Source: Hormiphora californensis
Lineage: Eukaryota; Animalia; Ctenophora
Direction: 5' to 3'
Length of the DNA stretch: 64,000 nucleotides
Assembly: GCA_020137815.1 (NCBI GenBank)
Contig: CM035359.1
Coordinates: forward strand, 3,596,001-3,660,000
The position numbers and the translations under genes are program-made. A model generated the notes under the pieces. It did no database searches and was not told the DNA's origin. It saw only the letters and a list, made by a program, of their open reading frames with translations. The first letter of the stretch is position 1. Each line of letters opens with the position of its first letter. Shown here in pieces: positions 35,193-57,299 of the stretch.

Positions 35193-35236
35193 ATAAATTT
35201 ATACCAAAAAAATTGACTGAATTCAACCCTTTTCAG

Positions 35237-37629
35237 CAACACCGCTATACGTTTCAACTGTGTGATGTTCAACTACCAAGAGACCAATGTGTATTGTGAC
35301 GACAAGTGGAGAACATGGGTCAACTGTACATCCGACCACACTGATGAAACAAATCTGTACTGTGCAGTGGGGCGCTACAAAACATCAATAGACGAGACAT
35401 TGGAATGTGATCTGGAGAGGTGTGTGTGACGACGGTGAAGATAGGACTGTCTTATCATAGATGATGTTACTACTAACTATTACCGGTACATCAACCTACA
35501 TCAATGACAAAGTAGAGGAGGACTACACCATGTACCGGTGCCCCTGGGGGTAGAACTCATCTTCTTTACCATCCAATCAACAAGTTCTGTGATGGTTATG
35601 TAGATTGCCCAGTGGTGGAGAGACGGTTATCCTAGTGAGGAGGAGAGCGCGGGTAGTTCCAGCTCGAAGGCTGGATGGGTATCTATCGGAGAACACCATG
35701 TATTTGCAGCCCCCTGTCTGCCTGGCGTCATGGCAAGTTCAACATGCACTGTGATAGAAGTTGAACTGGGGTACGGTATAACCAAGTACCTTCACTACGA
35801 TCATGCCTCTTTTGACTGCGCTAACACGGGAGGGGAGGTTTATGTGCTTGCAGTGACAGCTGATCTCTGCGACACACTGGACTACTCTGAAGATCTGGAC
35901 GTTACCACTGAGGGTCTGAGTGGATACACCACCGTGTACTCTCTCTTCAATAATCTGTCTGATGTTGGCTCCTTGCTTTACAATGGAAGTGCAACCGACA
36001 CGATATTCACTTGCTCCAACGACATCATGATCGCTTCAAGCAAGGTCTGTGACTACATTAATGACTGTGGTGATGACTCGGATGAGAAGAACTGTCTGAA
36101 TCGTTTCACCTGTGGGACGGATAACACAACTATTAAGAAGACTCAGGTGTGCGACACAGTGTTTGACTGTACTGATAAGAGCGACGAGTGTGATGAAGGA
36201 TGCAAGGACAGCACTGTCGTCTGGCGGATGATAACGACCCCTTTTTATAGGGGCATCGCAATCACTTTTGGCCTCTTCTCTCTCGTCGTCAACTTAGTAT
36301 CCCTGGTAATGTTTTTCAAGATGCTATTGACGACAAAGGACATTTCATTTAGCCTGCTAACAAACGACATCCTTGTGGCACTGATCGCTCTGGGAGACTT
36401 CTCTGTAGGGATATATATGGTACTGGTCTTCTCTTACGACCAGTATTATGGGGAGGAGTATTGCAAGGAAAGGCTGAAATGGCTCTCTAGTACCCCCTGC
36501 GGGTTTATTGGTGTAGTTAGCACATTTGGAAACCAGCTATCTCTCCTCTCTATGACATTGTTATCAGTCTTCAGGCTCATCTCTATCAAGACAATGTTAA
36601 TATTCTCCTCCCTCAGTAAGAAGATACCTTGCCTTACAACTTGTGTAAGCTGGATCTGTTTCCTGAAAGATGAACGCAATGAGCCTCCTCCAATTATCCC
36701 ATGTCATCTCGCCACTATTGTAATAATACAGGTACTAACATCAACAAACATCATCAGGTTTTGCACGACCTCTTGAAAAACATGAATCGTCTGGCGAACA
36801 CGATAGGGCCCATTAAATTCTATAGCCCAACTGACTATACAATTTCTTTTTAAAACAACAAAGGGGTGTGTTATATCCCACATTATTTCATTACTTCATC
36901 TTGGATAGCTTTCCGGGATTCTAGATTGTTTACACCTACGCTGGATGGATATCGAGAGACGTTATGACTCCTGACGTAAAGCAACATTCCTATTACACCT
37001 ACGTCAGATAACAACCAATTGTTATGTCTACCGAGAAGAATCGATGCAATACTTAAAGGAGGATACGAAGCGGAGAGGACTCACTGATACTCACTGAGAC
37101 TCACTTGGACCACCAGACTCTTCACCCGACTCACACCATAGTACGGAAGGACCCGAGAACGATCCCATTGATATCTGACCCATCACCCCCTTGAATCGGA
37201 GGATACCCATCAGATCACTGATTGCAAGTTAACATTGCCTTGCAATATATACTGTAGTTCTCAAGTGTTATACAAAACAGTAAACCTATTCACCCACACA
37301 TTATCATACAAGACCACCTTAACATGATCATAGCAACAGACTTTGCTACCTGGATCCCCTTTATCACTCTGTCGTTCCTGCATTACAACGGTATTTGGGA
37401 TGGTAATAATCTCTATGAGTTCTGCTCCATCCTCCTGATCACAATCAATAGCGTCCTCAACCCCATCATTTACAACGGGGATGCCGTTATTAGGGTGCTT
37501 CTCAGGTGGAACAGAAGGATCGCCAGCTCACTAGGAATCATCCATGTCACACAGACTGCCAGCATAGAACTACAGGGCATGAAGGGTCGTCGTGAAAGCA
37601 GGAAAATTGATGAAAAATCCAGTCAGTAG
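35237..37629 (+). CDS. 3' part of a second LDLa-7TM GPCR; starts at a splice acceptor; frame-noisy
   Basis: Begins ttttcAG|C AAC ACC. LDLa repeats VCDYINDCGDDSDEKNC and VCDTVFDCTDKSDEC; TM1-3 in ORF 35730-36776 (LIALGDF); TM6-7 in ORF 37324-37629 (TDFATWIP, INSVLNPIIY). Indel noise at 35310-35730 and 36660-37320. Confidence 0.82.
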
Positions 37630-37749
37630 AATCAAAAAGTGAAACGTGGGTTCGGTAACCTGTTTAGTATGAGTAACATTCATCCTTCTTGTGTTCGAAA
37701 CAAAAACATGTGATAAAAGGAGCACGTGTGCGGGTGTACTATAGTATTG

Positions 37750-40700
37750 TGTTAGTTAAAAACTGATTTATGATGTTTTTGCTCCCTGATGAGATAGACT
37801 TGAAGAACTCGACATAATATATCGAACCTCAATCTCATCAGTGGTGTAAAGTAAGGACGTTCGATACGGGTGTGTTTGGAAAGGGACGTTCTTGGGGTGG
37901 TTTCGTGACACGTATGGGGCGTACCCGTCAGCTGGAGCGTAAAGGCGAAAGTAAACACGTTGTCTTTTATCTTGTGAATGTAAAAGTAACGGTAAAGGAT
38001 TGTTACAGTTCAGTTGACTAAGAGAACACACGCTTTGAAAGTTGCTTCGCTCCGACAAAAAAGCTCACTCTCAAAACATCAATCAATCTTCTCCTCAGAT
38101 CTCAGAAAACGCGCGACGTGTCACCAAAGCGACACACACCGCGCGCGAAGATGCTGTGCTTTAATAGAACTCAGCGTCAAAACAAGCACCTTCGCGATAG
38201 GACACAGACACAAACCACCATTCTCACACACACGCACACACAAACACACAGGGCTGGCCCAGTTCTGCACCATTCATCAAGGACAAAAGCGCCGTTGCCA
38301 CCGACTCCTTTGAGCCGGTGACACGGTGTCCTCGACAGAATAGCCCAGAACTGTACCATGAGCACGGGACGATGAAAATAAACGAATATCGAGAAAGAGT
38401 ACACGTGACTTACAAGATACACTCTACAAGGAGTTACGTTAACGGTAAAAATAATTCATTAAAAATACTGTGTAGAATAATAAAATCGGACCATAGCATA
38501 CCCGGGTAATAATTAAGATCATTAAAAGCTTCACATTTTGTGAATACAAACATGTTCATGGTCAGTAATACCACTGTATAAAATATTACAATTTGTTTCT
38601 TTTTCTGTTTTCTCTTTCTCAGAGAAATTCTCGCTTTAAACAATGATTTCACGATGAGGTAAGGAAGAAAGGTCTCTGAAGTTCCAATTAAAGGGGGCAT
38701 TGCTGTTCACGTTGCACCATGTGGCCGATACCGTCCACCCCAGGAACACGATGTCAAAGGATGGCGCACAGGTTGATGGAAAATTGATGATGAGATTGAT
38801 CGGACACCGGTTGTTTCACTCTTTCTCAAGCGAGTTTCTCAGGGGGTAATCAAACTTCAGCAACAGCCGGTTCCTGACAAAACCATTGATCTCAAACCAA
38901 TAGATCACGGCTTCTCTTCACCTCCTTATCATGTCTCAAGGAAGCAAAATACGCATGTTCACACTTCACATGAACTGTTCACCGGTATCGCAGATGGTAG
39001 CTGCCATGTATCGTTAGGTAGCACATTTACCTTGTCATCAGGTTTCAGTTTGTTTCTGGATCATCAAAACATATCAACAGATAGAGGTCAGTTGTATGGT
39101 TGCTGTTGTCGAGAACTCTCAACTTGGTTGGGGTTATAAAAATAAATCCAAAAGGATTTAAACGGGTTGTCGAGTACACTCACTTAGTTGTAAAATAAAA
39201 TCGAAATCCAAGAGGATTTGATGGGTTGTCGAGTACACTCAACTTGGTGGGGTTATAAAAATAAATCCAAAGATTTAACGGGTTGTCGAGTACACTCAAC
39301 TTAATTGTTAAAATAATCGAAATCCAAGAGGATTTGATGGGTTGTCGAGTACACTCAACTGGTTGGGTTATAAAAATAAATCCAAAAGGATTTTAACGGG
39401 TTGTCGAGTACACTCAACTTAATTGTTAAAATAAAATCGAAATCCAAGAGGATTTGATGGGTTGTCGAGTACACTCAACTTGGTTGGGTTATAAAAAATA
39501 AACCAAAAGGATTTTAACGGTTGTCGAGTACACTCAACTATTAGTGTAAACACTGTTTAAATGTAGAGGGAGATCAGAAGATCTTACTTCCGGAACAGAT
39601 GAGCCTCAATGTGGAGTCGAAGATGTTCAGGCCTAGCAGCAGTCAGTGTTGGGGAGTGGCGAAATCTCGTGCACTGAGTAGGAACACACTCATATCGACC
39701 ACATGACAACTAACCCCCGAATCGGTCAGGTTTTTGAACTGAGCTCGAAGCCTGATTCTCCGGTCATTTCCTCCTGTAACTGGCGGAGAGGTTTGGTCTG
39801 GAGAAGGTGTTTCCGCTGTATCATGGTCATCTTCGGGTTGCTCTGGTGTTGGCACGATTTCAACTGAAGTTTCGTTACAATCGGGTGATCTGCATTTGCA
39901 TCTGAACTAGAACTGGCATCATTGGTGGGTTTGATTCGGTTTTCTTCAGTTTCTCCGAATTTTTACACTCTACCGTTTTGCCGTTGCGTGCAAATAACTT
40001 CAACTTTCCCACACCAATACCGTTCTCCTACTCTCATTCACCTGTAGAGGTAAGGGCTGATCACTTCGCTCACCGAGAGGGTCCCTCGAACCTAGGTCCA
40101 ACATTTAATGAACGCGGCACGGGATTTTCACACAGAACTGATCTCCAATGCAAGCTCCGGGTCATTTAGTCCTTGTTGAATTGCTTTGGCCGCTATTAGG
40201 TCTTCATATCCACGTTCTGCCTGATTTTGTAACTCAAGTTACAGATTTCTCGGTAGCGGTTGGTAGACGGACGCTGGAATGCCCATCTGTGGAGTCTTAT
40301 CATTTTTCCATGGGTCGGCGAAGATGTAACGCATCAGGCATGTTTGGTTCTGTGCCAAATACAATCCTGTGTGCCGTGAAGCCTGTTCTTCTGGATCTGG
40401 TGTTGTTTAGCTTGAAACAACTTGGTCAGATGCAAGTCCCAATCTTTAGGGTTGGATTCAAACAGGGTTGCTCTGAGGATCGATCAATTTTTGTTGCTAT
40501 TTTCAGCACGTCCAGTACTGCGGGCTGAATAAGCTTGGCCGTGTTGAACTTTCACGTTTAGCTTTTCGAAGAAATCCTTGAATTCTTTGCCGTTGAATTT
40601 TTGATGTTGATCACCGATTATTTCTCTCGGCCAACCAAATTTCCAGATCCAATGAGCGAGAATTTTCTCACGGCTCTCAACGGATGTTTGGGTCTTCGTA

Positions 40701-43700
40701 GGCACTGCAACTAGAAAGTTTGAATAAACGTCTGTAATTGTTAGACGTTCTTGTTGCCTCTTATCGTCGATCCACGGGCTTCTGGAACGATATGATCGAT
40801 TACAATAACGGCTTTGAACTCGTGACACACAAATGTGGCCATCTCGGCTTGGAAGGTCTGTTGACGCTGTTTGTTGAGGCACCTTTACACACTGACCGAT
40901 GTATAGTCCGACTGTTTGGGCTGGGGCCGGCCAGTAAAAGTTTCTTCGTAGGTGATCAACTGTTGCACTGACTCCGGCTGACCTGTGTGGAAGTCATGAG
41001 CCTGTCTGATAGCTCTTCTCGCCTTCATAGGTACCACGATCAGCCAGTTGGAATCATTTGTCTTTATATCGAGCCATTTTCTTTGCAAAACACCATCCTC
41101 TAACCGGAGCAGCTGGTATTGTTTCCACAAAGACTCTAGATCAGGTGGCCCTGTGGCTTGTACCACTTGTCTATTCCCGTCACTCACCCATTTTCTCACT
41201 AATTTTAGAATGTCATCTTGCTCCTGGGCAGTTCCCTCATTCAGCCCATGTCCTTTCCTGCTACGGGGATATCTACCCCGTTTTGCTGGATCGATGCGCA
41301 TAAGCAATGAATCTCCTGCTCATATGACCATCTTCTTCTGCTTCGTTATCTTCATTCATGACTTTTATTGGATGGGTGGTTATCCTCTTCACAGCTCACC
41401 CGATTGTCGAGTATCTGCACAGGCCTAGAGTTTCTTCCGAGCCAATAACTCCATGTTTCGTGTGGCTGTTTTCATCTGATTGGGTGGGTGACTCGTCTCC
41501 GTTACTGAAGTTATTTATACTCCGGACGTACGATGCTTCCGGAAACTGAGTGCTCTGCACGATAAAGACTTCGCGCTCGCTTGCACTTGCTAACTCGTGT
41601 TGTCGACAGAGATATGTCTTCATGAATCTTCAGTAGACGTGTACGTTCCTGTATCCATGTCGCTGCTAAAACGATCTTCATGGTTGGACTCTGTGTCTGC
41701 TTCGGACTCGTGTGGAGTTGTGACGATCCTCAGTATCTTTCGGACGACATTTTGTTGTATCTCTTCGTTGTTTCTATCGCATAGAGTAACAACCTTGACA
41801 ACTTTAGTCAAATCTTCATGAGTTTGAGTGTTCGTTTGTGTTTCGGCTTCGGTCTTGGTTGGCGGAAGCTGAACCCTACAACCAGTCACATATCTTGTTT
41901 TCCGGCCACTTAAATGTCGGAGTTTAATTGAACTCGGCTAACTTCATAACTTTCTGGTTACCGCGTTGTCTGGCTTCGTGAACAGGGTACCTTCGCTTCG
42001 GCTTTTACCAAGGATAAACAGTTGTTATGACGACAACTGTTTCACGTTATAAAGATATATGGTCCATGCTGGATTGCTGCGAACAGAGCCTCGAACTCCA
42101 GCTTCGTCTGTCCCCTGCTCTCTTGTACTCGGGGAGAGCTCGGCTGTAGTAAGCGACATCCTTCGTTTCCTCTACCTTCAGGTGTATCCAATCTGGGATA
42201 GGGAGGCGCCTAAACCTTCTCACTGGCATCTAGTGTGACCTCGTAGGAGCTGTAAGGATCTTCTGGATTTGGTATTGCAAGCTGTGTACTTTCCGCGACG
42301 AGTTGCTTCAGCTTCGCATAAGCTTCACTACATTCCTTTGTCCATTTGAATTTCTGCTCCTTTCTCCGCGTATGGAAGCGAATATGGCTTACTGATGGAA
42401 CTGTATCCTGGAATCCATTTCCTAACGTAGTTTAATGCACCATCGCTGCATCACTTCTTTCTTGAGTCAGGTTCGCGGAGTGCTAGGAGGTCGGCTACAC
42501 GGTCTTCAGTGATACTTATACCGCCACCACTGACACGAACTCCAACAAAATCAACTGCATCTCTCATCAGTGACTTTTGTCCGGTGAAATTTTGAGGTTC
42601 GCACGTAACATCTAGAGTAGCCGTTCCAATCGATCCAGATGTTGGTCAACTGTGACCGAAGACAGGAGGAGGTCGTCCACAAATTGGACAACCTGTTCAA
42701 TCGGGAGGGATCCGCAGACGATTCATCATATCACGAAGGACGGTCCGGATGATCGATGTCCCATCACTGTCTTCGAGAAGCGTACTGCGTATGGTGTTCT
42801 TATACAGGAAGGCAGTGATCTGTTTCGAGGATTCATCATAGGGAAGCTGCCAGTATCCTCGGGTGAGGTCAAAAGAAAGAAATATCTTGTCCTGGCCGAT
42901 TTTATCCAAGACATGATCCAAATGAGCCAATGGGAAGTTTGCTGGCATACACATCTTGTTAACGTTTTCCTAGGTCGCACCAAGCCTGTAACGCTGATGC
43001 TGCCTTTAGGTGTTTTCTTTCGTACCAGGAATGTTGGTGAGTTCCAATCTGACCGTTGCGGAAGGATCTCCACCACATTCGTTTTCACCATCTCATCGAT
43101 GTTTCTTGCATCTCCCCCTCAAGCTTGTAGTGGGCAAGGGAATGGAGGGGTCCACTGAGGTGTAGCCCCTTCCTTCAACTTGATCGTAGCTTTGTACATT
43201 TGCAGGAACCGAGATCGTACTCATCGTATGCAAAACAGTTCCCTGTGTTCCAATGATGTCTTTAGGATCTGTGAGCTGTTTTTCGTGAGGTTCCTGGATG
43301 CAGTTTTTACTTTTAGACGCTCGAATATTCTTCCTTGTCACTTTCTCGACTTTCCGGTTCCTAGACTCACGGAGAAATTGGATTCGGTCTTCCCATTCCA
43401 CTCTAGAATAAGGGTCGTACTCTGGCATGGGCGGATTTAGCGGCTTTATCACCCCTTTGGAGGTTATCGGCTCCTCGCTAAGTTCAAAACTCTCATGGGA
43501 ATGTCTCCTTCCATAGCTCGGCAATTTGCGTCACCAGATGAGTAGGCCATTATTTTTCCGTGACCATCAGTTGAGACAAGACCGATCGTATCACTAGACA
43601 ATCTTCCTTCAGGATCCTACGACATACCCCATAGTATGAGGTGGTATTGTGGTGAGTTTCTCCCCACCTCTATCTGGAGAATCTTCTTGGTGCTTCTGGT

Positions 43701-45859
43701 CTTGGCAGGAAGGTACTGTTCACCATTTGGGACTCTTAGTTCAGCGTTCGTAAGTCCAAGGCGGCTCCTGTACTACGACAGAATGGGTCACCTAATAGAA
43801 TATCTGTATCCATTCCTTCGCACACCACGAAGTTGACCAGATTAACTGGTGGCTCCTCCGACTATCATACACAAGGAGATGGCGCCTCTGCAAGGTATCC
43901 GATTTCCGCTGAAATCTCTCAACTTTCTTGTTGTCTCACGGATCTCAGACACTAGCCCGTACTTACATACAGTTGTCAGTCAATAAGGTTACTTGGCTTC
44001 TGTATCGATGAACATGCGCACCGGGTGTTTAGTTTGATCCTCACACCTGCGGGGCCATGGAGAGTCCGTTTACAATAATTTCTTGAGATTTCCGTATTTC
44101 TTCCCAGAGAGGGCTTTCACTTTCCGCTGCCTTGCTCCTCTTGTTCTCTTTTTCTTCCGTTTGGTCTTGGGTTCAGGGATAACATCGTCCTCATTGTTGC
44201 CCTCGACCTCAACCACTGCTGAACTATCGACTATTTCATTTTTCTCATCGCTCACGTCAGTGTGGGATTGATTCTTCTCCTGCTTTCGGATGACCACTTT
44301 TTTCCGTTTTTTGTTCTTGGGGAAGACTTAGGAGTGGATTACGAGTCCTTTGAGTCCACATCAGATGCTGTGGAAAGACCTTTTATCATTCTCATTCGGG
44401 TGCTACTTCGGTACCCGCTACAGCTTGTGTACTGTTTAAAGATGTTGCTGTATCTCCTTCTTCCTCTCTATAAACACCTTGTCTGATCGTGGTGAATCCC
44501 AGACGCATTTTACCGGCACAGATTCGGGTGTGGTCACCCTGTTTTCCTCGATTTCCTTCTTCTGTGCCGGGGTCACTGTCCGCTCAATTAATTGGCGCGG
44601 CGGAGTTCTGGTGGTGTGTCCGCGTTGTTGAAAATCTCCGACCGCTCTCTCGTTTAACTGCCATCCTCGGTTCTGGCAATTTCTGCTGAGGTGCCATTCT
44701 GATGACAAACATAGCATAGACCGTTGGCTCGATCATGTTCTCTCGTTCCAGGCACTGACGATGTGGCTTGTCTTCTGTTACCAGTTGTGAATGTCTGGGG
44801 TCGGAAAGTTCATGGTCTGCTGATTCTGCATCGGGTTAACATCGGTTTGGATAGTGCTCGCTAGCACGGGACAGTTCTGGCTTCATGTAGGGTCTTGACC
44901 ACATATTTGGCAAGTTATCTTGAAACCACAGTTGCTTCCGTTGTTCGTCTTCTTACAGAATTGCACGATTCCAACTCTTCTCTGGTAAGGGCTGGTTTTG
45001 GCTCATTCGTCCGTCACTCGAATTGCATAAACAGTGGCTCCAATCCCACCGCCTCTCTTGAAGATTTTGTTCTGCGTCCGCTGCTCTCTCAGCTTCTGCA
45101 ACCAAGTTTCAAAAGCGACGTCCTGTTTCTTCCAGTCACAGACATCCTTAGCAACATCACGGTCATGAAGACCTCTTTAGAGCGTCTCTTGTTTGCGTTC
45201 ACACGATCACGGACTCACCTGGGAACGCAAGCTCTGGCTGCCCGATGGATTTCTCTCTGCAAAGTCAGATACCGACTCGTGTCATCCTGTTTAAGTCCTT
45301 CATTTCTAAAACGATTTGTCTCAGCAATGGCAGCGCTCATTCGGATAGCATCACGGTATGAATTGTAGCAACTTGTGTGATTGGCCATTTCTTCTTGGCT
45401 GAACTTCAGACGGCGTATCCGATCATAGGTGGCATCGCACTTTAAGCAGTTAAGTAGGATTCCACGCACATCCTGAGGTTCTCGTCGTCCATTGACAGAT
45501 AATCTTCAAATCTCTTCAGTACGATTTCAGACTATTCCCTTCCTTGAACTTTGGTGGTTTTATATTCCGGGGGAGGGGTTCTGTATCTGTTTTGGTCACT
45601 GGAGTGGTTGAACGTTCCGTTGATCTGCACTGGTCGACTTGCTGGAACTACCACGGGTTTTCTGGGCACGTTGGGTTGTTAGATGACGTGCTTCGGCAAC
45701 TCAGAGCTCTTGATCGGTCCAAAGTTCGTGACATTCTTTTCCTCCGGTATCCTGGGCTTATCTTCAGGGATTCGGAAACTTGCTCTCGTGTGGGAAACTT
45801 GACACGATTGTGACGCAAATGCATGTCGCGAGGTCATTGGTTTCCGTTCTGGCTCAACT
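37750..45859 (-). mobile_element. Gypsy/Ty3 LTR retrotransposon, degenerate, 5' end lost in the gap
   Basis: gag-like region 45860-44050; protease MFIDT near 44015; RT motifs WNSPTFLVRKK, FDLTRGYWQL and FVDDLLL (~42665-42680); RNase H ~42230; integrase LRLEDGVLQRKW and WIWKFGWPREIIGD. A purine tract is followed by TGTAAT at 38590, the 3' LTR start. The LTR left end is uncertain (37750 or 37979). Confidence 0.9.
39103..39540. repeat. Eight-copy array of a 21-bp core with two alternating ~37-bp spacers in the Gypsy 3' UTR
   Basis: Core ggttgtcgagtacactcaact at ~39103, 39164, 39223, 39280, 39339, 39399, 39459 and 39519. Confidence 0.9.
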
Positions 45860-45959
45860 NNNNNNNNNNNNNNNNNNNNNNNNNNNNNNNNNNNNNNNNN
45901 NNNNNNNNNNNNNNNNNNNNNNNNNNNNNNNNNNNNNNNNNNNNNNNNNNNNNNNNNNN
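45860..45959. other. Assembly gap (100 N)
   Basis: Seen directly; followed by (atttacaag) x12 at 45989-46096. Confidence 1.
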
Positions 45960-46398
45960 AGGGGATGGGAGGCAAAGAAACACACACTATTTACAAGATT
46001 TACAAGATTTACAAGATTTACAAGATTTACAAGATTTACAAGATTTACAAGATTTACAAGATTTACAAGATTTACAAGATTTACAAGATTTACAAATTAG
46101 TTTCGGTAACTATAACAGTGCTGCTTGCAGTGAAAATACTGTAACGCAGAATACAGTAATCTGCGCGGAATTTGCGTAACGCGCGAGTGCTTTTGTCAAC
46201 AATCTGTTAAAAGTACTTTGTGGTCAGCACGTACTACCGCGCCGATTGGACGCGGTTGCGCGTCTTCATACAGTGTCTCCGTTTTCCATTACAGTATTCT
46301 CACTACAAGCGACCGTGTAAGTTTCCGGGCGGGGGATTAAGATGATATAAGTGATATATTTACACGCTGGATTGTTTAGAAGCTGGATGTATTGTTAC

Positions 46399-47072
46399 CT
46401 GGTCCCATTGAGAGTGCAGTTAAGGGCCTCATATTCAGTGGTACAAAGTTCTGACGTGGTGACTGTAGTGGAGCTGCAAATTAGATCAGAGAAACAGTAG
46501 TTTTTAGGGGCAATTTTGCATTTGCGGGCATCGCACTATAGACGCAGTACCCACGTACTATAGACGCATTATAAACGCATTATAAACGCATTATAGACGC
46601 ATTATAGACACACGCAATATAGACGCAATTTCGTAAGCAGCACTATAGACGCAATGTAGACGCATTATAACAGCAACATAAACGCATTTTTATAGACGCG
46701 ACGCAGTATAGCCGCATTATAGGCGCACTACCCACCCCAAATTCACCTTATAGACGCACTATAGACGCATTATAGACTGACTATAGCAGCACCATAAACG
46801 CTACATAGACCCATATAGACGCATGATAGAAGCATTATAAACGCAAATCGCTTTTTATAGACGCCGCGTCTATAAAAAACGTGCTTTTTTTAAGAAGCAC
46901 TATAGACGTACTCAGACGCACGCTGCGATATTTGAGGCGCAGTTGGGCGAACTATAAACGCATCTTTGTCGCATATAAAAGGAAGCAGTATAGACGCATT
47001 ATAGACGCATTATAGCCGCATGTGAGCGAAATCGATAAAGACGCAATATAGACGCAAAATAAGAAGGAGATC

Positions 47073-47110
<38 letters not shown>

Positions 47111-50100
47111 AGGGAGGGAGGGAGGGAGGGAGGGAGGGAGGGAGGGAGGGAGGGAGGGAGGGAGAGGGAAGGAGAGGGAAAGAGGGAGAGAGGGAGAGAG
47201 GGAGGGATACAGAACCAGATCAGATAGAGACAGATGGAGAGAGGGAGGGAGGGAGGGAGGGAGAGGGAAGGAGAGGCCGGAAAGAGGGAGAGAGGGAGGG
47301 ATACAGAGATGCAGATGCACAAAGATCTGAGACAGACGGAGAGATTAAGATGGAGATCAGAGATTAAGATGGAGAGAGATTAAGATGGAGAGAGAGGGAG
47401 ATAGTCCGTCCATCTCTGTCTTTTTCTGTCTCACTCCGTCCCTATCTCACTCTCTCTCCATCTTACTCTCTATCTCCATCTTAAACTCTGTCCGTCTGTC
47501 TCAGGTCTTTAAGTTTATCCATCTGTCTCTGTCCCTGTATCCCTCCCTCCCCCTTTCCATCTCCTTCGCTCTCCTCCCTCGCTCTCCCTCTCCTTCTTAT
47601 TTTGCGTCTATATTACGTCTTTATCGATTTCGCACACATGCGGCTATACTGCGTCTATAATGCGTCTATACTGCTTCCTTTTATATGCAACAAAGATGCG
47701 TTTATAAAACGCCCAACTGCGCCTCAAATATCGCATTGTAGCCTGGAGTACGTCTATAGTGCTTCTTAAAAAAGCACGTTTTTTATAGACGCGGCGTCTA
47801 TAAAAAGTGATTTGCGTCTAGAATGCTTCTATCATGCGTCTATATGGGTCTATGTAGCGTTTATGGTGCTGCTATAGTCAGTCTATAATGCGTCTATAGT
47901 GCGTCTATAAGGTGATTTTGGGGTGGGTAGTGCGCCTATAATGCGGCTATACTGCGTCGCGTCTATAAAAATGCGTTTATATTGCTGTTATAATGCGTCT
48001 ATATTGCGTCTATAGTGCTGCTTACGAAATTGCGTCTATATTGCGTGTGTCTATAATGCGTCTATAATGCGTTTATAATGCGTTTATAATGCGTCTATAG
48101 TACGTGGGTACTGCGTCTAAAGTGCGATGCCCGCAAATGCAAAATTGCCGTTTTTAGGTGGAATCCATTTCGTTAACTTGTTGCTGGAAGGGAGAATTAT
48201 TGTTATTATTAGGTGGGATCCATTTCGTTAACTTGTTGCTGGAAGGGAGAATTATCGTTATTATTAGGTGGGATCCATTTCGTTAACTTGTTGCTGGAAG
48301 GGAGAATTATTGTTATTATTAGGTGGGATCCATTTCGTTAACTTGTTGCTGGAAGGGAGAATTATTGTTATTGTTATAGGTGGGATCCATTTCGTTAACT
48401 TGTTGCTGGAAGGGAGAATTATCGTTATTAGTATGTGGGATCCATTTCGTTAACTTGTTGCTGGAAGGGAGAATTATTGTTATTGTTAGGTGGGATCCAT
48501 TTCGTTAACTTGTTGCTGGAAGGGAGAATTATTGTTATTGTTAGGTGGGATCCATTTCGTTAACTTGTTGCTGGAAGGGAGAATTATTGTTATTATTAGG
48601 TGGGATCCATTTCGTTAACTTGTTGCTGGAAGGGAGAATTATTGTTATTATTAGGTGGGATCCATTTCGTTAACTTGTTGCTGGAAGGGAGAATTATTGT
48701 TATTAGTATGTGGGATCCATTTCGTTAACTTGTTGCTGGAAGGGAGAATTATCGTTATTATTAGGTGGGATCCATTTCGTTAACTTGTTGCTGGAAGGGA
48801 GAATTATCGTTATTATTAGGTGGGATCCATTTCGTTAACTTGTTGCTGGAAGGGAGAATTATCGTTATTATTAGGTGGGATCCATTTCGTTAACTTGTTG
48901 CTGGAAGGGAGAATTATTGTTATTATTAGGTGGGATCCATTTCGTTAACTTGTTGCTGGAAGGGAGAATTATTGTTATTGTTAGGTGGGATCCATTTCGT
49001 TAACTTGTTGCTGGAAGGGAGAATTATCGTTATTAGTATGTGGGATCCATTTCGTTAACTTGTTGCTGGAAGGGAGAATTATTGTTATTGTTAGGTGGGA
49101 TCCATTTCGTTAACTTGTTGCTGGAAGGGAGAATTATTGTTATTGTTAGGTGGGATCCATTTCGTTAACTTGTTGCTGGAAGGGAGAATTATTGTTATTA
49201 TTAGGTGGGATCCATTTCGTTAACTTGTTGCTGGAAGGGAGAATTATTGTTATTATTAGGTGGGATCCATTTCGTTAACTTGTTGCTGGAAGGGAGAATT
49301 ATCGTTATTATTAGGTGGGATCCATTTCGTTAACTTGTTGCTGGAAGGGAGAATTATTGTTATTATTAGGTGGGATCCATTTCGTTAACTTGTTGCTGGA
49401 AGGGAGAATTATCGTTATTATTAGGTGGGATCCATTTCGTTGTTGGGAGAATTGTTATAATGATGACTGACCACGTTCTTTCTAAGATTAGTTACTAAAT
49501 CAATGTGAGGAATAGACCCTGTAAATCACCTGCTGGAAGAGGACGTTTCGACACATTGTACATCATTGTCCGTGGATGATGTGCAGTTGTACTCATCCTC
49601 ATAGTTGTAGACAGAGAACGTCACATCATTGTAAGTTATTGTGGTAGTGGTGGGACAGTTAGCCTCGTCATTGCACTGTTTCGACTTGGAGATGACCGTC
49701 TTGGTGGTGTCCTGGCAGGTGAACGTCTCTCCACTACTCACAGTACTGTCACTGTCACAGTCATCCTCATCAGAACAATCCGCACAGAAACACTGAAATA
49801 AGAAGATAGATAGGGGGATTCTATACTCTACCCCCCCCCCCCTCAAAAAGATAGTGAGCCTCAAACAATTCACCTAACCTGAGTTTCTCCTTTACGCTAT
49901 TTAACCCCTTGAGAGAGCTGATATTTATGGGTGATTGTATACTAACAAGATCATCGCAGTAATTGTCGGACCATACTGCTACAATGTTGCCATGCTTATC
50001 CTCACACACCTTGGACCCCAGTACCAGCCTCGATTTTTCCTAAAAAATATTGGGACATGGTTAACCACCGTTCTTTGTATAAAGATATTGGGATATATGG

Positions 50101-53100
50101 TAACCTCTAGTTGTTGTTATGGAATGTATCAATTACCTCGGTCACGGTCACGAAGGAGCACCCGCAAGTTTGGTAGTGTTTGGGGTCATAAGAGCAAACA
50201 AGGTTGAACAGGCAGAGACCGCCACTCCGTGCCGACACTTGGTATGCCTCCGGAGTCAGGGGACATTGATAGACCCCGTCCTGGTATGAGAACTGGGCAC
50301 ATGTTGTGTTGTCCGAGAGGGTCTCCATAGTGTTGAGTGTTGTTAGCGAACTGACAAACTCTGAAACAAGGGTGTTGAGTGTTGTTAGCGAACTGACAAA
50401 CTCTGAAACAAGGGTGTTGAGTGTTGTTAGCGAACTGAAAAACTCTGAAACAAGGGTGTTGAGTGTTGTTAGCGAACTGACAAACTCTGAAACAAGGGTG
50501 TTGAGTGTTGTTAGCGAACTGACAAACTCTGAAACAAGGGTGTTGAGTGTTGTTAGCGAACTGACAAACTCTGAAACAATTTCATAATTTGTTGGTACCT
50601 TTCATTACCCATCTATCACTACACTATTCCACTGATTAATGAAGTGGTTCAACATGTTACAATTAATCTTACTTTCGGAAGGGACCTGTTCAATGGAAAC
50701 CTCAACATCATGAACAAAGGGATCTTGACCCAGTAGAGTGATAGTGGCAGTACAAGTAAGGTTAGCAGTGGCAACTTCCCCATCCGTGATGTCTGTTTGC
50801 CACGTTCCCAGGAGATAGGACGAGTTACTTCCAACTGAAATCAGACTCAATGAAGATTTAGAAAGATGTATTTCTTGCATGTTCCAACTGAAAACAGACT
50901 CAATGAAGATTTAGAAAGATGTATTTCTTGCATATTACCTATGTCAGAGCATGAGGGTATTGAACAGAACTCGAACTCTTCATCAGGGTTGGTAGAGTAG
51001 CACCATGCTCTAGTCTTATTGAGCTCCGACCCATTAACATTTCTACAGTAGTTGTGCTGCAGAGTGGGGTACAATGCGAGGGTTGCGGTATCTAGGATAT
51101 CAGACCAGTCTCTACACTCCCATCCAGACTCCGTGACAGCGTAACTTCCAATGTATGTTGCATAAGAATCCTCCTCGTCCCCGCACACTGTTTGAACGAA
51201 GTGTTCTTTAGTAAGAGAGTAATCTTGAAATATAGTATAGTGGTCCTAGGTAAAGTTACAGATTGCTTACGATAGGTAAAGTCGTTGCAGACTTCTGTGA
51301 GATTACACTTTTCATAGGATGACGTGTTGGTAATATCTGTGTAACAGATTGGGTCTAGGTTTATCCAACTATCCCCAGGCTCCACAACTCTCCGACAATA
51401 ACTCTCGCACTGGGTCCCGTCTTCGCTTTTGTTGATATTTCCACGATAAAAGTTCGCAGCATAGTATCGACAGTTTTCTAGGGATTAGGAAAAGGTGTCT
51501 TGACTCAAATACTTTACATTAGCACTTTGCTATTTTCACTGGGCTCTTACCGGCAATATCGAGGTTACAGGATGGGAGATCACAATACCCCCATCTTACA
51601 GCTTTGTCTTCGGAGTAACACCACGCTATGGAGCTTCCACTTGGGTCCCTACAGTAGTTTGAGTCCAAGCCCTCATTCGGGTAGCTAGAATGGTAGAAAT
51701 GTTGAAATGGAGGAGTTTGATTGATCACTGAATTACAACAATATAATGCAACTGTTTGATTGATCACTAAGGGGGGGATGGACGAATAAGCTTACTTCTC
51801 TGGGGTATAGTCATGCTCTTGAGGTGATTGGGAGGACCATGGCTGGCAAGCGATCCCCGAAACAGTGTGGTTCTTGTAACCCCGATAAGAGGTCTGAGAC
51901 CCACTCCAACATGCTGAACAAGTTAGGTTAATTGAACAATGGTTAATTAACTAAACAAGTTGTTTAATTGATCAAACAAGTTAGGTTAATTAATCAAGTT
52001 AGGTTAATTAATCAAGCTAGGTTAATTGATCAAACAAGTTAGGTTAATTGATCGAACAAGTTAGGTTAATGACAGCTCAACGATCTCGTTTCATACGAGC
52101 GATCTTGGGATTTCCCAGCGAACATGGTATATCCAGCGACTAAACCGAAACGAATCATAATATGTAACCACAGTTCACATTTAATCTCTATTATTTGCCT
52201 CCACCCGCCCCTCCACCCACCCCACCCCCACCCCACCCACCTCCCCCGCCTCACTCGTCCCAAAGTAGAGGACTTTCTGAAACAGGTTACTATAGAGACA
52301 ATCCTTGTGTTCTAATTCGCTAAGTCGCTTATCGCGTGTAAGTGTGTAACAACTCACAAATGTGATACATACTGAGGCCATCAAGATGCAGAGAGAGCAC
52401 TAACTCTCAAAAAATAAAGTAAGGTCGATTCTGAGAAATAAATAGAAAAGAATATCCCTGCCTTGCGACTTTCGTCCCGCCACGTAAATTACAATGTAGA
52501 CCTACCAGATGCCAGACCAATTCAAGATAATAGAGAAAGCCCAAAAACCTAATTATATGGCATATAATATATGCGAGTGTGACATTCTAAAAACTGAGGG
52601 AATGAGACTTATACCTAAGTGGCAAAACCTCGTACAATAATCTGGTAAAGCGATAACAAACCACACCACGGTACCTATCAAGCTAATCGAGATCGACAGC
52701 CCATATAAACAATAAACTCAAGAACCAAGATTAAGATAAGAGGGCGATATCCCTGCCTGTCGCAGGGGGATAGAGCCACGGAGTCAAGAACCACATGTAA
52801 GAAGAAATAATAGCCTGCGACTCCCGCAGGAGTTTACTCTCCCGAACCCGACACCTATAATGTGAACCTGCCTGTGGTAGTTCCTGATGGTGGGAGGGGA
52901 GGGGGGCTATTCTCCTAGTGCCGGCGATATCGCTTTGCGATAGTCCCCTGTGGGCTTGCCGTTGGCAAGCCCAGGCACTCCGTAGATAGAGATAGATAAG
53001 TTAGGTTAATTGATCAAGTTAGGTTAATTGATCGAACAAGTTAGGTTAATTAATCAAGTTAGGTTAATTAAACATTGAACAAGTTAGGTTAATTAATCAA

Positions 53101-54507
53101 GTTAGGTTTATTGATCAAGTTAGGTTAATTAATTAATTAATTATATCAGAAGGCCGAGGGAATTTAACTCACTGCATGGTGTTGAGGGGAAACACTTTTC
53201 CTTTAGAAGTGTGATATTGTTGATATAACACCAGGGTACTTCCAGTGCAAAGTCTAGGTTTCTACAGTAATTGTGATCACCAACTCCGTAAATACGCTCT
53301 CTGGAGTGGAAAATCAGATAACTTCGACAACCCGGTTTATAAAGGAACACTATAAGATGCCTCTATCTGATGGGTTGTCTAGTTACTAGTTTGATGGAGC
53401 TAATTAACTAACTAGAGGCCTCTATTTGATGGAGCTAATTAACTAACTAGAGGCCTCTATTTGATGGAGCTAATTAACTAACTAGAGGCCTCTATTTGAT
53501 GGAGCTAATTAACTAACTAGAGGCCTCTATTTGATGGAGCTAATTAACTAACTAGAGGCCTCTATTTGATGGAGCTAATTAACTAACTAGAGGGCTCTAT
53601 TTGATGGAGCTAATTAACTAACTAGAGGCCTCTATTTGATGGAGCTAATTAACTAACTAGAGGCCTCTATTTGATGGAGCTAATTAACTAACTAGAGGCC
53701 TCTATTTGATGGAGCTAATTAACTAACTAGAGGCCTTTATTTGATGGAGCTAATTAACTAACTACAGGCCTCTATTTGATGGAGCTAGTTAGCGGGGGGG
53801 GGGGGGGGGTCGACTAACAACTAACTCGTGACTGGTGTAGTTGACCCAGTTTTGACAGGAGTTTCCACTAATGGTTGTGTTCCTTGTACCACTATAAAAC
53901 TGGCCCCATCCAACGTCAGAACACTCCTTTTCTGGAGAGGATGTATATAGCAGGTCTTATTACTAGTATGGTGTAGTATAACAGGTAGATATTGGTTTTA
54001 TTACTACCAGTACTCTCTGATTCACATGTTTTAAAGAGGGGAGGTACCTGAAATTGTACTTGTTCCGTTTGACCAGGTGAGTACCAGGTGCTCTATCTCT
54101 TTGCTATAATAAGCGTCGAATGTGTCGTGATAAATAGTGCAGTTTAATGTACTGGTCTGACCCTCTATAGTGATGAAACTATCGCCTGGCTGAACGGTCA
54201 GATTGCTTTTCACCTGATCCATAACCGTGCCTACAGGGGATGGGAAGTTAGAAGTATTGTTAATGTCTGGTTCACTCAAACTTGGTTTGCCGACCCCACA
54301 TTTTAACTCACACTTCACACACATTTCAACTTACCATAAACCTCCACTTCACACATCGTGGTCCTGTTTCCCTTGAGCATCAGGGCACTGCCAGTGATCC
54401 CTCCACAGGGTATTTCGATAACTTGTTTTGTCGCATCACTATCAGATACTGTCCCACACAACATCTTGTCCTGTCCATTCATAACATAGACCTTGGATAA
54501 GACGATA
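46399..54507 (-). CDS. Multi-exon ectodomain: F-type-lectin/discoidin-like, Ig-like (split), four kringles, Cys-rich GPCR N-module, LDLa; probably the 5' part of the GPCR at 35237-37629
   Basis: All junction phases are consistent. Exons: 54335-54507 (..MCEVEVY), 54048-54230 (TLNCTI..LTWSN), 53826-53931 + 53173-53300 (kringle, HNYCRN..PWCY), 51796-51913 + 51551-51684 (kringle, NYCRDP..AWCY), 51271-51477 (reduced kringle), 50939-51187 (kringle), 50673-50834 (NLTCTAT), 50137-50360 or 50570 (VCSYDPKHYQTCG), 49947-50009, 49530-49792 (CSDEDDC, QCNDEANC..EDEYNC), 46399-46473. Confidence 0.88.
46509..48149. mobile_element. Foldback/Mutator-like element with ~560-bp modular TIRs
   Basis: 9-bp TSD gtttttagg (46500-08, 48150-58), GGC..GCC ends, arms built of tatagacgca repeats, and a purine/pyrimidine microsatellite core. 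Confidence 0.92.
48155..49455. repeat. 55-bp intronic minisatellite, about 23-24 copies
   Basis: Unit aggtgggatccatttcgttaacttgttgctggaagggagaattattgttattatt. Confidence 0.95.
50330..50579 (-). repeat. 42-bp x6 in-frame repeat; each unit contains a 3' splice site
   Basis: tgtttcAG acceptors at 50361, 50403, 50445, 50487, 50529 and 50571. The unit encodes FVSSLTTLNTLVSE. Confidence 0.9.
52070..52997. mobile_element. ~930-bp insertion splitting an (aagttaggttaattgatc)n array
   Basis: The same satellite lies on both sides (51919-52069, 52998-53140). A terminal hairpin gggcttgccgttggcaagccc precedes an agatag tail. Class unassigned. Confidence 0.55.
53389..53790. repeat. 35-bp minisatellite, about 11 copies, inside a kringle intron
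   Basis: Unit tttgatggagctaattaactaactagaggcctcta. Confidence 0.95.
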
Positions 54508-57299
54508 CTAGTTAAAACTGTAGTTCATAGCACAAACCAAAACTGTATTAGTAGTTCATGGCACAAACCATGAAGGTGCCACGCTGCCCGAGGAATCAGC
54601 TTGTGGCTGGGAAGGTACAAAATAAAGTTTATTGTACTAGGGGTCAGTTTTATGTACTTTTAATCCGCTACTTGTTGATGTATACGTAGCAGTAGGAATT
54701 TGGGGACCTCCCCCAGTGCAGTATGTAGGGCACACGAGTTAGGTTCCTCGTGTTCCTACATTGTTTCTCTCTCAGAGTGACTGAGAGTGAGTCGGATGAT
54801 AGGTATTTGATGATCTTATGATGGTTGAGAGTGAGTTAGGAGGATACAAATATTTAGGAATTCTTTAGGGGAGAATAGGCATTATTTATTTGTTACAATA
54901 GTTATGGAGAGATATTAGAAGAGGAGAATTTGGGTCAATGTTTGAGATGAGTAGGAATAGCTAGAAGCCGCGTACAGGGGATTGTGCGACGTGCCGAGAG
55001 GAGAAGCTGCCACGTAAGCCTAGGCTGTCGTGGATCGCGTGATCTGAGAAAGAGGTGACCTGAGAGCGAGGGAGGAGATGAGGGAGTTCTGTTTTGAGGG
55101 GATTAGAATATGTTGCTCGGGAGATGGTGGGGAAACCATCTCTCTTATATATTGGCTTTGCCCGAGTTTTGTGAGTCTCGTAGGGGGAGAAAGAGTTGTT
55201 TGAGGGAGTTGAGTTATTTGCAATATGTTGTATTATCTATTGTATATATGATTGTAGTTAGGGGCACATTAGTTACAACCTTTTAACCGACCCATTTCAA
55301 TTAGTACAACTCTACTCGGTGTTCCCCAATATTCTCGAGGGGTTCTCTATATTATCTCTTCTTGCCACATTGGCAATTCTCACTCTAGGGGAACACTAGG
55401 TACCGGATCGGGGGAACTCCTACTGCCTAGTTTAGGGTACAAAGTGTCTCCAGCCTCACTTCTAGCCATATTGGCAACTCTCTATAAGTGGGGACACTTA
55501 GTATCGGCGATAGGAGCTTCACGTTTGGTTGGATCGCGGCCAGTCACAAATCCTAAGGATACTGATCGGTGCAAGGTTAGGGGTCTTGTACGCTGCTAGA
55601 CCAGCAAGGTTTATTGGGCTGGAAACCCCAGTCCGTAGGTTGTCGAGCACGCTCAAGGGGAGGTCTAGTTACCCTTGTAGCGCCTAGCATTTTACAGTCC
55701 GTGCTGACGGCTCGGCTCACCCTACAAAAATGGTCCGACGAACTGTAGATTCAACTGTGTATAGGAAAAGGGGTCTCATTAGTGAAGTTCTGGCTGATTC
55801 GTGATTAGGGAGCAATGTGCAATTTTTTTCATATAAAATAGGAGGTCTTGTGAGGCTGTAGTTAGCGATTAGGGGAGCATTAGGGGCTTATCATCATCAA
55901 ATTAGGGATTAGGGAATTAATGTATCATCATGAGTCATGACATTATACAAGCTGGCTAGTATTATTTTAGAGTGCACGTTAGGGGACATTTATTGCTCGT
56001 GCATATAGGCTCGCGTGTAGGATTGGGTTTTATTTGGGACCTCGTCTCCCGTTATATTTTATTCGCTCCTAAAAGCGATTATTATACAGCTTTGGCATTT
56101 TAGGTTTAGTTTGTGCCTATTTTTTGATTTTATTTGGCTCAGATATTTAGGGGTTTATCAAAATTAAAATTCACTCGCACGAATATTGATAACGCGATTC
56201 GGAGGATTCTCTGGGGACAACGGATCAATGGGGTAATGTATGCGCTCTTCGTGGAAATATAAGTACTTCACATACATCTTAGGATGAGAGAATGCATGTG
56301 AAGGGTCGAACTTTTATGCGAGAAGAAATTCGGGGATTAAAAATGAAACCTAGGCAGCTCGTGAAATAATTATTTTTGGGGGGAACAGAGCAGCAAAACT
56401 TTCCTAGTCTGTTTATATATTATTTTAGGTCGTGTGTGTAAAACAGGGGTCACATTTGCTTGATAGATAGGAAAGCTTTGCATGGTCTCATTATTTATGT
56501 AATTTTCTAGATGTTTCAAAATGTTTGTCTGCATTTACCGATGATACCAATGCCATCGTGAGTTAACGCTCCAGGCGGTACACCTGCCCATGCAGCTGTT
56601 TGCCAGCCAGTGCAGCCGTTTGTCTAGCAGTTTTGTGGGTATGTGTTGACTAGAAGTTCGTTGTCCGTGGGGGGTGGGGGGCACACGAACAAGACTGCTC
56701 TGTACGCGCACTGACTGGCGAGGTAGGAAGTTTGCTGTGCTACGTGAGTTGGGGAATTTGCTGAGTTGAGGAGGAATTTTTACAAAATAATAAATAGCCA
56801 GAAAAATTCCAATATTTTTGTGGTGGGTGATTGTTTCCAACACCAAAATGTGTCGCGCCAGATCTGCATGTTAACCGAAGATAATGGAACATGCTGATCA
56901 ATTTAATATTTTGATTTGTGGTAGATACATGGCGCCCGATTTAAATATGTTTTCAATAATTAGTATGGATAGCACTGAGGCCTGTAGTGGTTTAGTGGGG
57001 GGATTAGGGGATGCTACTATCACACATTATCACACCGCTCACACACCACACACAAGCTTTGGGGGGTCGGGGGTCGCACATTCCCAACACCTGGGCGATA
57101 CTTCGTTGAAATGTCGACTAAATCGGCGTTGTGATTGTGTGGGTGAAGGGATTGTGTGATGCTCAGATGCCCGAAAGGACATGTAAGTATTTCAGACTTA
57201 GTGTGTTAAGTAATTTGGTCGAATAAAGGGGGAGGGGACTGACTAGAACTGACCAAAACTTATTTACTTTGTATTGCGAGACAGGGGTAGGGGACAATA

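What the first reader, a model, noticed from the sequence alone, without database searches (positions are those of the whole stretch)
35237..54507. Candidate new receptor architecture: lectin-Ig-(kringle)4-LDLa-7TM GPCR
Seen: the - strand exons encode an F-type-lectin-like C-terminus (MCEVEVYG), an Ig-like domain and four kringles. They continue with VCSYDPKHYQTCG and LDLa-like repeats that mirror LCPNDVAHYQAC and the following region in the neighbouring intronless GPCR. Known: kringles occur in plasminogen-family proteases, HGF, ROR/MuSK RTKs and Kremen; LDLa-GPCRs (GRL101/RXFP type) normally pair LDLa with LRRs. I know of no rhodopsin-class GPCR with this ectodomain. Inference: this LRR-less GPCR family is gaining glycan- and protein-binding modules by exon shuffling, giving an adhesion-GPCR-like or immune/prey-sensing receptor on a class A 7TM.
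Basis: partly seen in the sequence, partly recalled or inferred. Interest (0 to 1): 0.85.

Follow-up and report, generated by a model that had tools for sequence, protein, structure and literature searches.

The report
Kringle-bearing GPCR gene, split by inversion
This comb-jelly locus holds both halves of a receptor gene that joins kringle modules to a rhodopsin-type seven-helix receptor, a combination backed by a sister-species gene model and five intact-looking sister loci, but here the two halves lie on opposite strands beside an assembly gap, so this copy is either mis-assembled or broken.

Summary
The minus-strand exons are real. Three kringles pass or nearly pass Pfam, and a fourth is a shortened kringle. 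There is also a lectin-like tail, two Ig-like half exons, the GPCR family's N-terminal module and a Cys-rich LDLa-like exon.

No 7TM lies on the minus strand. The only nearby 7TM (35237-37629) is on the plus strand, beyond the gap and a degenerate retroelement.

The two parts are nevertheless halves of one gene:
- The Pleurobrachia bachei model sb/3461060 (1317 aa; Pfam Kringle + Ldl_recept_a + 7tm_1) maps residues 1-573 onto the minus exons and 570-1317 onto the plus-strand GPCR.
- The splice phases match (2/2).
- Five sister loci in this genome carry the same parts on one strand.

The gap sits exactly where the GPCR exon's acceptor should follow. The 600 bp next to the other breakpoint is rich in indels. 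The GPCR half also lacks TM4-TM5 and holds an 89-bp inverted piece.

Verdict: the architecture is probably real for a small pleurobrachiid clade and I found no description of it. This copy, as assembled, cannot encode it, whether through mis-assembly or a true inversion. No transcript evidence was available. Two other first-stage notes of this scan (s1-876713, s1-875418) flag the same architecture elsewhere in this genome.

The parts
54335..54517 (-). Exon with the last ~50 residues of a discoidin/F-type-lectin-like fold (...MCEVEVYG). Donor in phase 1. The 5' boundary is uncertain; the P. bachei model starts at the ATG at 54482.
   Evidence: no Pfam hit
54048..54230 (-). Ig-like first half exon (phase 1-1). 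The P. bachei model uses an earlier donor at 54085.
   Evidence: no profile support
53826..53931 (-). Kringle 1, first half (acceptor phase 1, donor phase 2).
   Evidence: Pfam Kringle E 1.4e-4
53173..53300 (-). Kringle 1, second half (acceptor phase 2, donor phase 1).
   Evidence: Pfam Kringle E 1.2e-5
51796..51913 (-). Kringle 2, first half.
   Evidence: Pfam Kringle E 1.5e-7
51551..51684 (-). Kringle 2, second half.
   Evidence: Pfam Kringle 48.3 bits, over the cut-off; P0121 residues 152-206
51271..51477 (-). Kringle 3: a shortened kringle-like module with six Cys and no central loop (phase 1-1).
   Evidence: Pfam E 0.22 only; P0121 residues 207-273, 71% identity
50939..51187 (-). Kringle 4 (phase 1-1).
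   Evidence: Pfam Kringle 46.8 bits; P0121 residues 274-358, 89% identity
50673..50834 (-). Ig-like second half exon (phase 1-1).
50137..50360 (-). Stalk unit plus the GPCR family's N-terminal module (GVYQCP...VCSYDPKHYQTCG). Donor in phase 0. Five further identical acceptors lie 42 nt apart up to 50570.
   Evidence: family HMM positions 20-71, E 3.5e-4
49530..49792 (-). Cys-rich LDLa-like exon. Donor AG|GTGATT in phase 2. If left unspliced, a TGA follows one codon later.
   Evidence: Pfam Ldl_recept_a E 0.032; P0121 residues 487-573, 85% identity
47990..49556 (.). 55-bp minisatellite (about 24-28 copies) in the intron after the Cys-rich exon. The twin locus has about 240 bp of it.
46509..48149 (.). 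Palindrome with arms of about 560 nt (92-98% complementary). Absent from the twin locus.
45860..45959 (.). Assembly gap, placed exactly where the acceptor of the GPCR exon should follow. 45967-45990 matches (23 of 25 bases, weak on its own) the stretch that precedes that acceptor in the twin.
39600..45859 (-). Degenerate LTR-type retroelement (RT, then integrase; many frame breaks), cut off by the gap. No LTR pair was found.
   Evidence: Pfam RVT_1 and rve
35237..37629 (+). 3' half of the same gene on the opposite strand: acceptor in phase 2, rest of the ectodomain, LDLa pair, TM1-TM3, TM6-TM7 and C-tail. It has four local frame excursions with stops (35237-35640), and TM4-TM5 are missing.
   Evidence: Pfam Ldl_recept_a E 9.5e-10, 7tm_1 E 0.007; family HMM 234-1006; P0121 residues 570-1034 and 1213-1317
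36634..36722 (-). 89-bp piece of the second extracellular loop, inverted inside the plus-strand GPCR half.
9963..13379 (+). Neighbouring intronless LDLa class-A GPCR (1138 aa), used as the family reference. It has its own signal peptide and no kringle.

Best explanation
The locus holds the ortholog of Pleurobrachia bachei sb/3461060. This is a class-A (7tm_1) GPCR of the LRR-less LDLa-GPCR expansion of ctenophores. Upstream of its usual N-terminal module it has gained a lectin-like tail, an Ig-like domain split by four kringle modules, and a stalk.

Inferred working: the kringle, Ig and lectin-like modules would bind a protein or glycan partner and pass that to the LDLa pair next to TM1, by analogy with LDLa-dependent activation in relaxin-type receptors.

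Shown: the 5' half (minus strand, 54517-49530) and the 3' half (plus strand, 35237-37629) are two halves of one gene lying in opposite orientation. The segment 35220-45859 is flipped relative to the ortholog and to five sister loci.

Inferred: I lean (about 55:45) to a mis-assembled or poorly polished segment rather than a true inversion. Either way, the sequence as assembled cannot encode the full receptor.
For: - P0121 carries Pfam Kringle (82 bits), Ldl_recept_a and 7tm_1 and is P. bachei sb/3461060.
- Its residues 1-573 map on the minus exons and 570-1317 on the plus-strand GPCR, at 65-89% identity.
- Donor phase 2 at 49530 matches acceptor phase 2 at 35237.
- The family HMM covers 20-71 on the minus strand and 234-1006 on the plus strand, without overlap.
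- Five loci in the same genome are collinear on one strand, from kringle through TM7, with intact ORFs of 626-860 aa carrying LDLa + 7tm_1.
- For mis-assembly: the right contig ends in a stretch that resembles (23 of 25 bases, E 0.18) what precedes the GPCR acceptor in the twin copy.
- 35220-35820 has 13 small indels against 8 substitutions relative to the twin, whose frame is open. The next 800 bp has 1 indel against 33 substitutions.
- The retroelement stretch measures 1801 nt against exactly 1830 nt in eight other copies.
Against: - There is no transcript evidence. Only one run was listed and it held nothing.
- P0121 is a gene model. Its K1/K2a region looks mis-predicted and it has no signal peptide.
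- The junction at 35219|35220 lies inside a contig without a gap.
- The twin locus on C1 carries a different, clean inversion sharing that breakpoint, which suggests real rearrangements at this site.
- The GPCR half also has a 465-bp loss and an 89-bp inverted piece, which looks more like decay.
- No other public protein of 724-2305 aa shares the kringle-to-GPCR bridge region.
Confidence: 0.8

Rival explanations
1. A true inversion of 35220-45859 broke the gene. The kringle half now ends at the TGA one codon past the unused donor and could yield a secreted lectin-like/Ig/kringle protein. The GPCR half is a decaying pseudogene.
For: - The left junction is seamless within a contig.
- The twin copy on C1 has its own clean inversion, with a 15-bp filler and a breakpoint inside the K1a exon.
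- The GPCR half lacks TM4-TM5 and holds an inverted 89-bp piece.
- All kringle-half exons are still open with good splice sites.
Against: - The gap coincides exactly with the second breakpoint.
- The excess of indels over substitutions is confined to the 600 bp beside the first breakpoint, which is unlike natural decay.
- Two independent inversions would need to share one breakpoint.
Confidence: 0.4
2. The gap hides a second, sense-oriented copy of the GPCR exon, so the gene is intact. The plus-strand copy would then be a degenerate inverted duplicate that made the assembler break at the repeat boundary.
For: - The right contig appears to stop at the boundary of the repeated sequence.
- The twin has three 45-bp tandem copies of the acceptor plus exon start at that boundary.
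- Gap length is only an estimate.
Against: - No further copy of the block appears in the assembly, unplaced contigs included, beyond the twin and more distant relatives.
- The left flank of the gap is retroelement, not GPCR.
Confidence: 0.12
3. These are two unrelated convergent genes: a secreted kringle protein and a separate LDLa GPCR that happen to be neighbours.
For: - They lie on opposite strands, 12 kb apart.
- Kringle genes and LDLa GPCRs are both very numerous in this genome: 114 and more than 300 matches.
Against: - The ortholog model spans both.
- Five loci are collinear.
- The halves cover complementary parts of the family HMM, and their phases match.
- The GPCR half starts at an acceptor, without a start codon or signal peptide.
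Confidence: 0.04

Closest known systems
Pleurobrachia bachei gene model sb/3461060 (EukProt EP00116_P000798)
   Same: Same order of parts: lectin-like tail, Ig-like half, kringles, Ig-like half, stalk, N-terminal module, Cys-rich exon, LDLa pair, 7tm_1. Identity to the window's exons is 65-89%.
   Different: It is collinear in one protein. It lacks K1 and K2a as predicted. It is a model, unnamed and, as far as my searches went, undescribed.
GRL101 / type-C LGR and relaxin receptors (LDLa + LRR + 7tm_1)
   Same: Class-A 7TM with LDLa modules in the ectodomain. NCBI names a Bolinopsis relative 'GRL101-like'.
   Different: No LRRs in any member scanned. The LDLa pair sits directly before TM1. Kringle, Ig-like and lectin-like modules are added.
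Amphioxus Adhesion GPCRs with kringle domains (PMC2246102)
   Same: Kringle modules in the N-terminus of a seven-helix receptor, within a lineage-specific expansion.
   Different: Those are Adhesion-class receptors. Here Pfam finds 7tm_1 and no 7tm_2 or GPS.
Kremen, ROR and MuSK (kringle-bearing single-pass receptors)
   Same: Kringle used as an extracellular module of a membrane receptor (my own knowledge).
   Different: They have a single transmembrane helix and kinase or no catalytic tail, not a GPCR.

Membership tests
Rhodopsin-class GPCR (Pfam 7tm_1) | Seven helices matching PF00001 above the gathering score | tested here: not met
   The window copy has only a TM6-TM7 piece, 16.3 bits against a 30.5 cut-off, and TM4-TM5 are absent. 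The feature is met in the ortholog P0121 (44.5 bits) and in sister loci (48.6 and 50.1 bits).
LDLa-bearing class-A GPCR expansion of ctenophores | LDLa pair directly before TM1, plus the family's N-terminal module | tested here: met
   Ldl_recept_a E 9.5e-10 with 2 stretches. Family HMM 474-765 at E 1e-67 on the plus strand, and 20-71 at E 3.5e-4 on the minus strand.
LGR / GRL101 type | Leucine-rich repeats in the ectodomain | tested here: not met
   No LRR family in the Pfam scans of GPCR1, the window pieces, P0121 or the sister ORFs.
Kringle domain | PF00051 above the gathering score, with the six-Cys pattern and the NYCRN...WCY motif | tested here: met
   K2b 48.3 bits and K4 46.8 bits against a 34.3 cut-off. 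K1 and K2a are partial because of introns. K3 does not meet it.
F-type lectin / discoidin (F5/8 type C) | Whole ~140-residue domain matching PF00754 or PF22633 | tested here: not met
   No Pfam hit. Only the last ~50 residues resemble a relative (E 0.048). No further exon within 50 kb.
Immunoglobulin-like domain | Profile or fold match over both half exons | tested here: inconclusive
   No Pfam Ig family at E up to 1. The fold was not predicted because the exons may not be joined here.
Adhesion GPCR | GAIN/GPS site and 7tm_2 | tested here: not met
   Pfam reports 7tm_1 only and no GPS or 7tm_2.

The most novel reading that the evidence does not exclude
The boundary between the Cys-rich exon and the GPCR exon holds a 45-bp tandem unit that contains the acceptor itself. 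It may be a recurrent inversion hotspot: two near-identical gene copies carry different inversions that share this breakpoint. If these are real, and polymorphic or somatic, DNA inversion could switch the product between a membrane GPCR and a secreted kringle protein.
Probability: 0.06. Interest if true: 0.85.

Novelty: new variant of a known kind. Interest (0 to 1): 0.55.

Why it matters
Kringles are known on proteases, growth factors, single-pass receptors and, in amphioxus, Adhesion GPCRs. I found no report of them on a rhodopsin-class receptor.

A small clade of such genes in pleurobrachiid comb jellies would show that the large ctenophore LDLa-GPCR expansion diversifies by adding phase 1-1 modules in front of a fixed core. 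It would also give concrete candidates for finding ligands.

For this assembly, the locus marks a likely orientation or polishing error, or a real inversion, that annotators should not read as two genes.

Tried and rejected
- **7TM on the minus strand:** tblastn and a family HMM with filters off found none.
- **Retroelement bridging the gap:** no LTR pair or any shared sequence across it.
- **Flip of a whole contig:** the right contig runs to 128431 and the left one covers at least 1-45859, so flipping either does not restore the gene.
- **Putative exon at 50036-49940:** dropped, because the ortholog splices 50137 directly to 49792.
- **Kringle next to a GPCR on C9:** these are a separate small gene and a GPCR with its own signal peptide.
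- **Kringle cluster 75-110 kb downstream:** shares only the kringle fold.
- **RNA evidence:** one run was listed and nothing was laid on the collinear sister locus.
- **Spliced-junction pattern in metagenome contigs:** 0 matches.
- **Collinear junction pattern in the own genome:** 0 matches, though no indels were allowed.
- exons were searched one by one by reference.
Full report
**Setting.** The window is G000:C10:3596001-3660000 of a 110.7-Mb genome in 45 contigs. Its GPCRs are 86-87% identical to Pleurobrachia bachei proteins. It is therefore a pleurobrachiid ctenophore. From memory, size and contig number fit Hormiphora californensis.

**Observation.**
- Stop-to-stop frames of the minus strand and Pfam confirm kringle sequence. 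K2b scores 48.3 bits and K4 46.8 bits, both over the 34.3 cut-off. K2a scores 32.1, K1a 22.5 and K1b 26.0.
- Reading codon by codon gives exons with AG/GT sites. K1 (53931-53826 and 53300-53173) and K2 (51913-51796 and 51684-51551) are each split by a phase-2 intron.
- K3 (51477-51271) is a shortened six-Cys kringle-like module (Pfam E 0.22). K4 is 51187-50939.
- Every module is bounded by phase-1 introns.
- The Ig-like halves (54230-54048 and 50834-50673) flank the kringles. No profile supports them.
- The lectin-like exon holds only the last ~50 residues of a discoidin/FTP-like fold. tblastn gives E 0.048 to such a domain in a 968-aa ORF on C6. Language-model neighbours score 0.82-0.84, which is a lead only.
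- Motif and Pfam searches found no N-terminal half within 50 kb upstream.
- The exon 50360-50137 carries the family's N-terminal module. An HMM of 87 family members matches it at positions 20-71 with E 3.5e-4.
- The Cys-rich exon 49792-49530 is LDLa-like only weakly (E 0.032). It ends in AG|GTGATT, phase 2.

**Where the 7TM is.**
- The intronless neighbour GPCR1 (9963-13379) and the family HMM hit only plus-strand sequence (35217-37626) near the finding.
- That GPCR half starts at an acceptor, TTTTCAG|C at 35237, in phase 2. It covers HMM positions 234-1006, the part that the minus-strand exons lack.

**One gene.**
- A search of 1.84 billion representatives with the plus-strand ORF gave P0121 (E 1.4e-185, 86% identity, 1317 aa), matched from residue 700 on.
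- P0121 is P. bachei sb/3461060. It carries Pfam Kringle, Ldl_recept_a and 7tm_1.
- Its residues 1-573 map on the minus exons from 54482 to 49532. Residues 570-1034 and 1213-1317 map on plus 35223-37626. Residues 1101-1132 map on a minus-strand piece at 36719-36624.
- Exon-wise searches of the genome found relatives.
- At C1:2.11M, C10:1.05M, C10:5.71M, C4:5.80M and C3:8.31M, the kringle(s), N-terminal module, Cys-rich exon and a long GPCR ORF follow each other on one strand. At C1:2.11M the Ig-like second-half exon is mapped as well. At four of these loci the ORF runs through TM7. At C3:8.31M the locus I could read ends before that.
- The two ORFs scanned (626 and 786 aa) have LDLa + 7tm_1.
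- These GPCR cores are 45-81% identical to the window's, against 38% or less for the rest of the expansion. This suggests one acquisition followed by duplication.

**The gap and the inversion.**
- The gap's left flank is a degenerate retroelement on the minus strand (RVT_1 and rve). Nothing is shared across the gap.
- A twin locus at C1:10.34M is about 96-98% identical in DNA.
- In the twin, the sequence matching the gap's right edge (45967-45990, a weak match of 23 of 25 bases) is followed directly by AATTCA..TTTTCAG|CAAC, the acceptor now found at 35220-35237.
- The segment 35220-45859 is therefore flipped relative to the collinear state, with one breakpoint exactly at the gap.
- The twin itself carries a different inversion, of its central block. 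Its breakpoints lie about 20 nt inside the K1a exon and at 35220, and it has three 45-bp tandem copies of the acceptor region.
- Against the twin, 35220-35820 shows 13 small indels and 8 substitutions. These cause four frame excursions with stops, while the twin's frame is open.
- The next 800 bp shows 1 indel and 33 substitutions.
- The retroelement stretch is 1801 nt against exactly 1830 nt in eight other copies.
- These features suggest poor consensus and perhaps a mis-join.
- The seamless left junction, the twin's clean inversion and the internal damage of the GPCR half argue for a real event. That damage is a 465-bp loss with an 89-bp inverted piece. I put mis-assembly at about 55%.

**Known or new.**
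- The literature searches found kringles only on amphioxus Adhesion GPCRs (PMC2246102). A 2025 survey lists LRR and LDLa as the rhodopsin-class N-terminal domains (PMC12716839).
- No other public protein of 724-2305 aa shares the bridge region.
- Other members of the expansion carry F5/8-type-C or SRCR domains.

**Limits.**
- There was no RNA evidence.
- Exons were searched singly by reference. The joined model was neither built nor folded.

Noticed in passing
window 46509-48149: Large palindrome with arms of about 560 nt at 92-98% complementarity, next to the 55-bp minisatellite. The twin locus lacks it: its sequence runs from the minisatellite straight to the equivalent of 46508.
   Followed up: partly
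L033 and L026 (G000:C1:10344263-10348300 and 10355458-10358715): Twin of this locus with its central block (K1a to the Cys-rich exon) inverted. One breakpoint lies inside the K1a exon with a 15-bp filler. Three 45-bp tandem copies of the GPCR-exon acceptor sit at the other. Kringle matches suggest an extra internal duplication.
   Followed up: partly
window 35220-35820 and 41800-43600: Excess of 1-2-bp indels over substitutions beside the breakpoint. The retroelement copy is 29 nt shorter than eight copies that are all 1830 nt. Both suggest locally poor consensus.
   Followed up: partly
window 50330-50579: Six 42-bp units, each carrying an identical TTTCAG acceptor in phase 1 ahead of the N-terminal-module exon. 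The P. bachei model has a single unit.
   Followed up: no
L001:4495-7398 (G000:C6): Single 968-aa ORF with discoidin/FTP-like domain, kringle, second FTP-like domain, many EGF repeats and Ig-like repeats. The LCEVEVYG motif is followed directly by a kringle, as in the window.
   Followed up: no
G000:C9:8086290-8086600 and 8088578-8092204 (L007, L008): A small single-kringle gene with its own signal peptide lies 2 kb upstream of an intronless LDLa GPCR on the same strand. The GPCR has its own start and signal peptide.
   Followed up: partly
whole genome G000: Very large expansions: over 300 candidate LDLa class-A GPCR loci, mostly single ORFs of 1000-1200 aa, and at least 114 kringle matches.
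   Followed up: no
L009 (G000:C4:7279000-7288999): Another minus-strand locus with a kringle match (from, L009 9288-9395), the N-terminal module and a GPCR whose ectodomain is read in three overlapping frames. This means frameshifts or very short introns.
   Followed up: no
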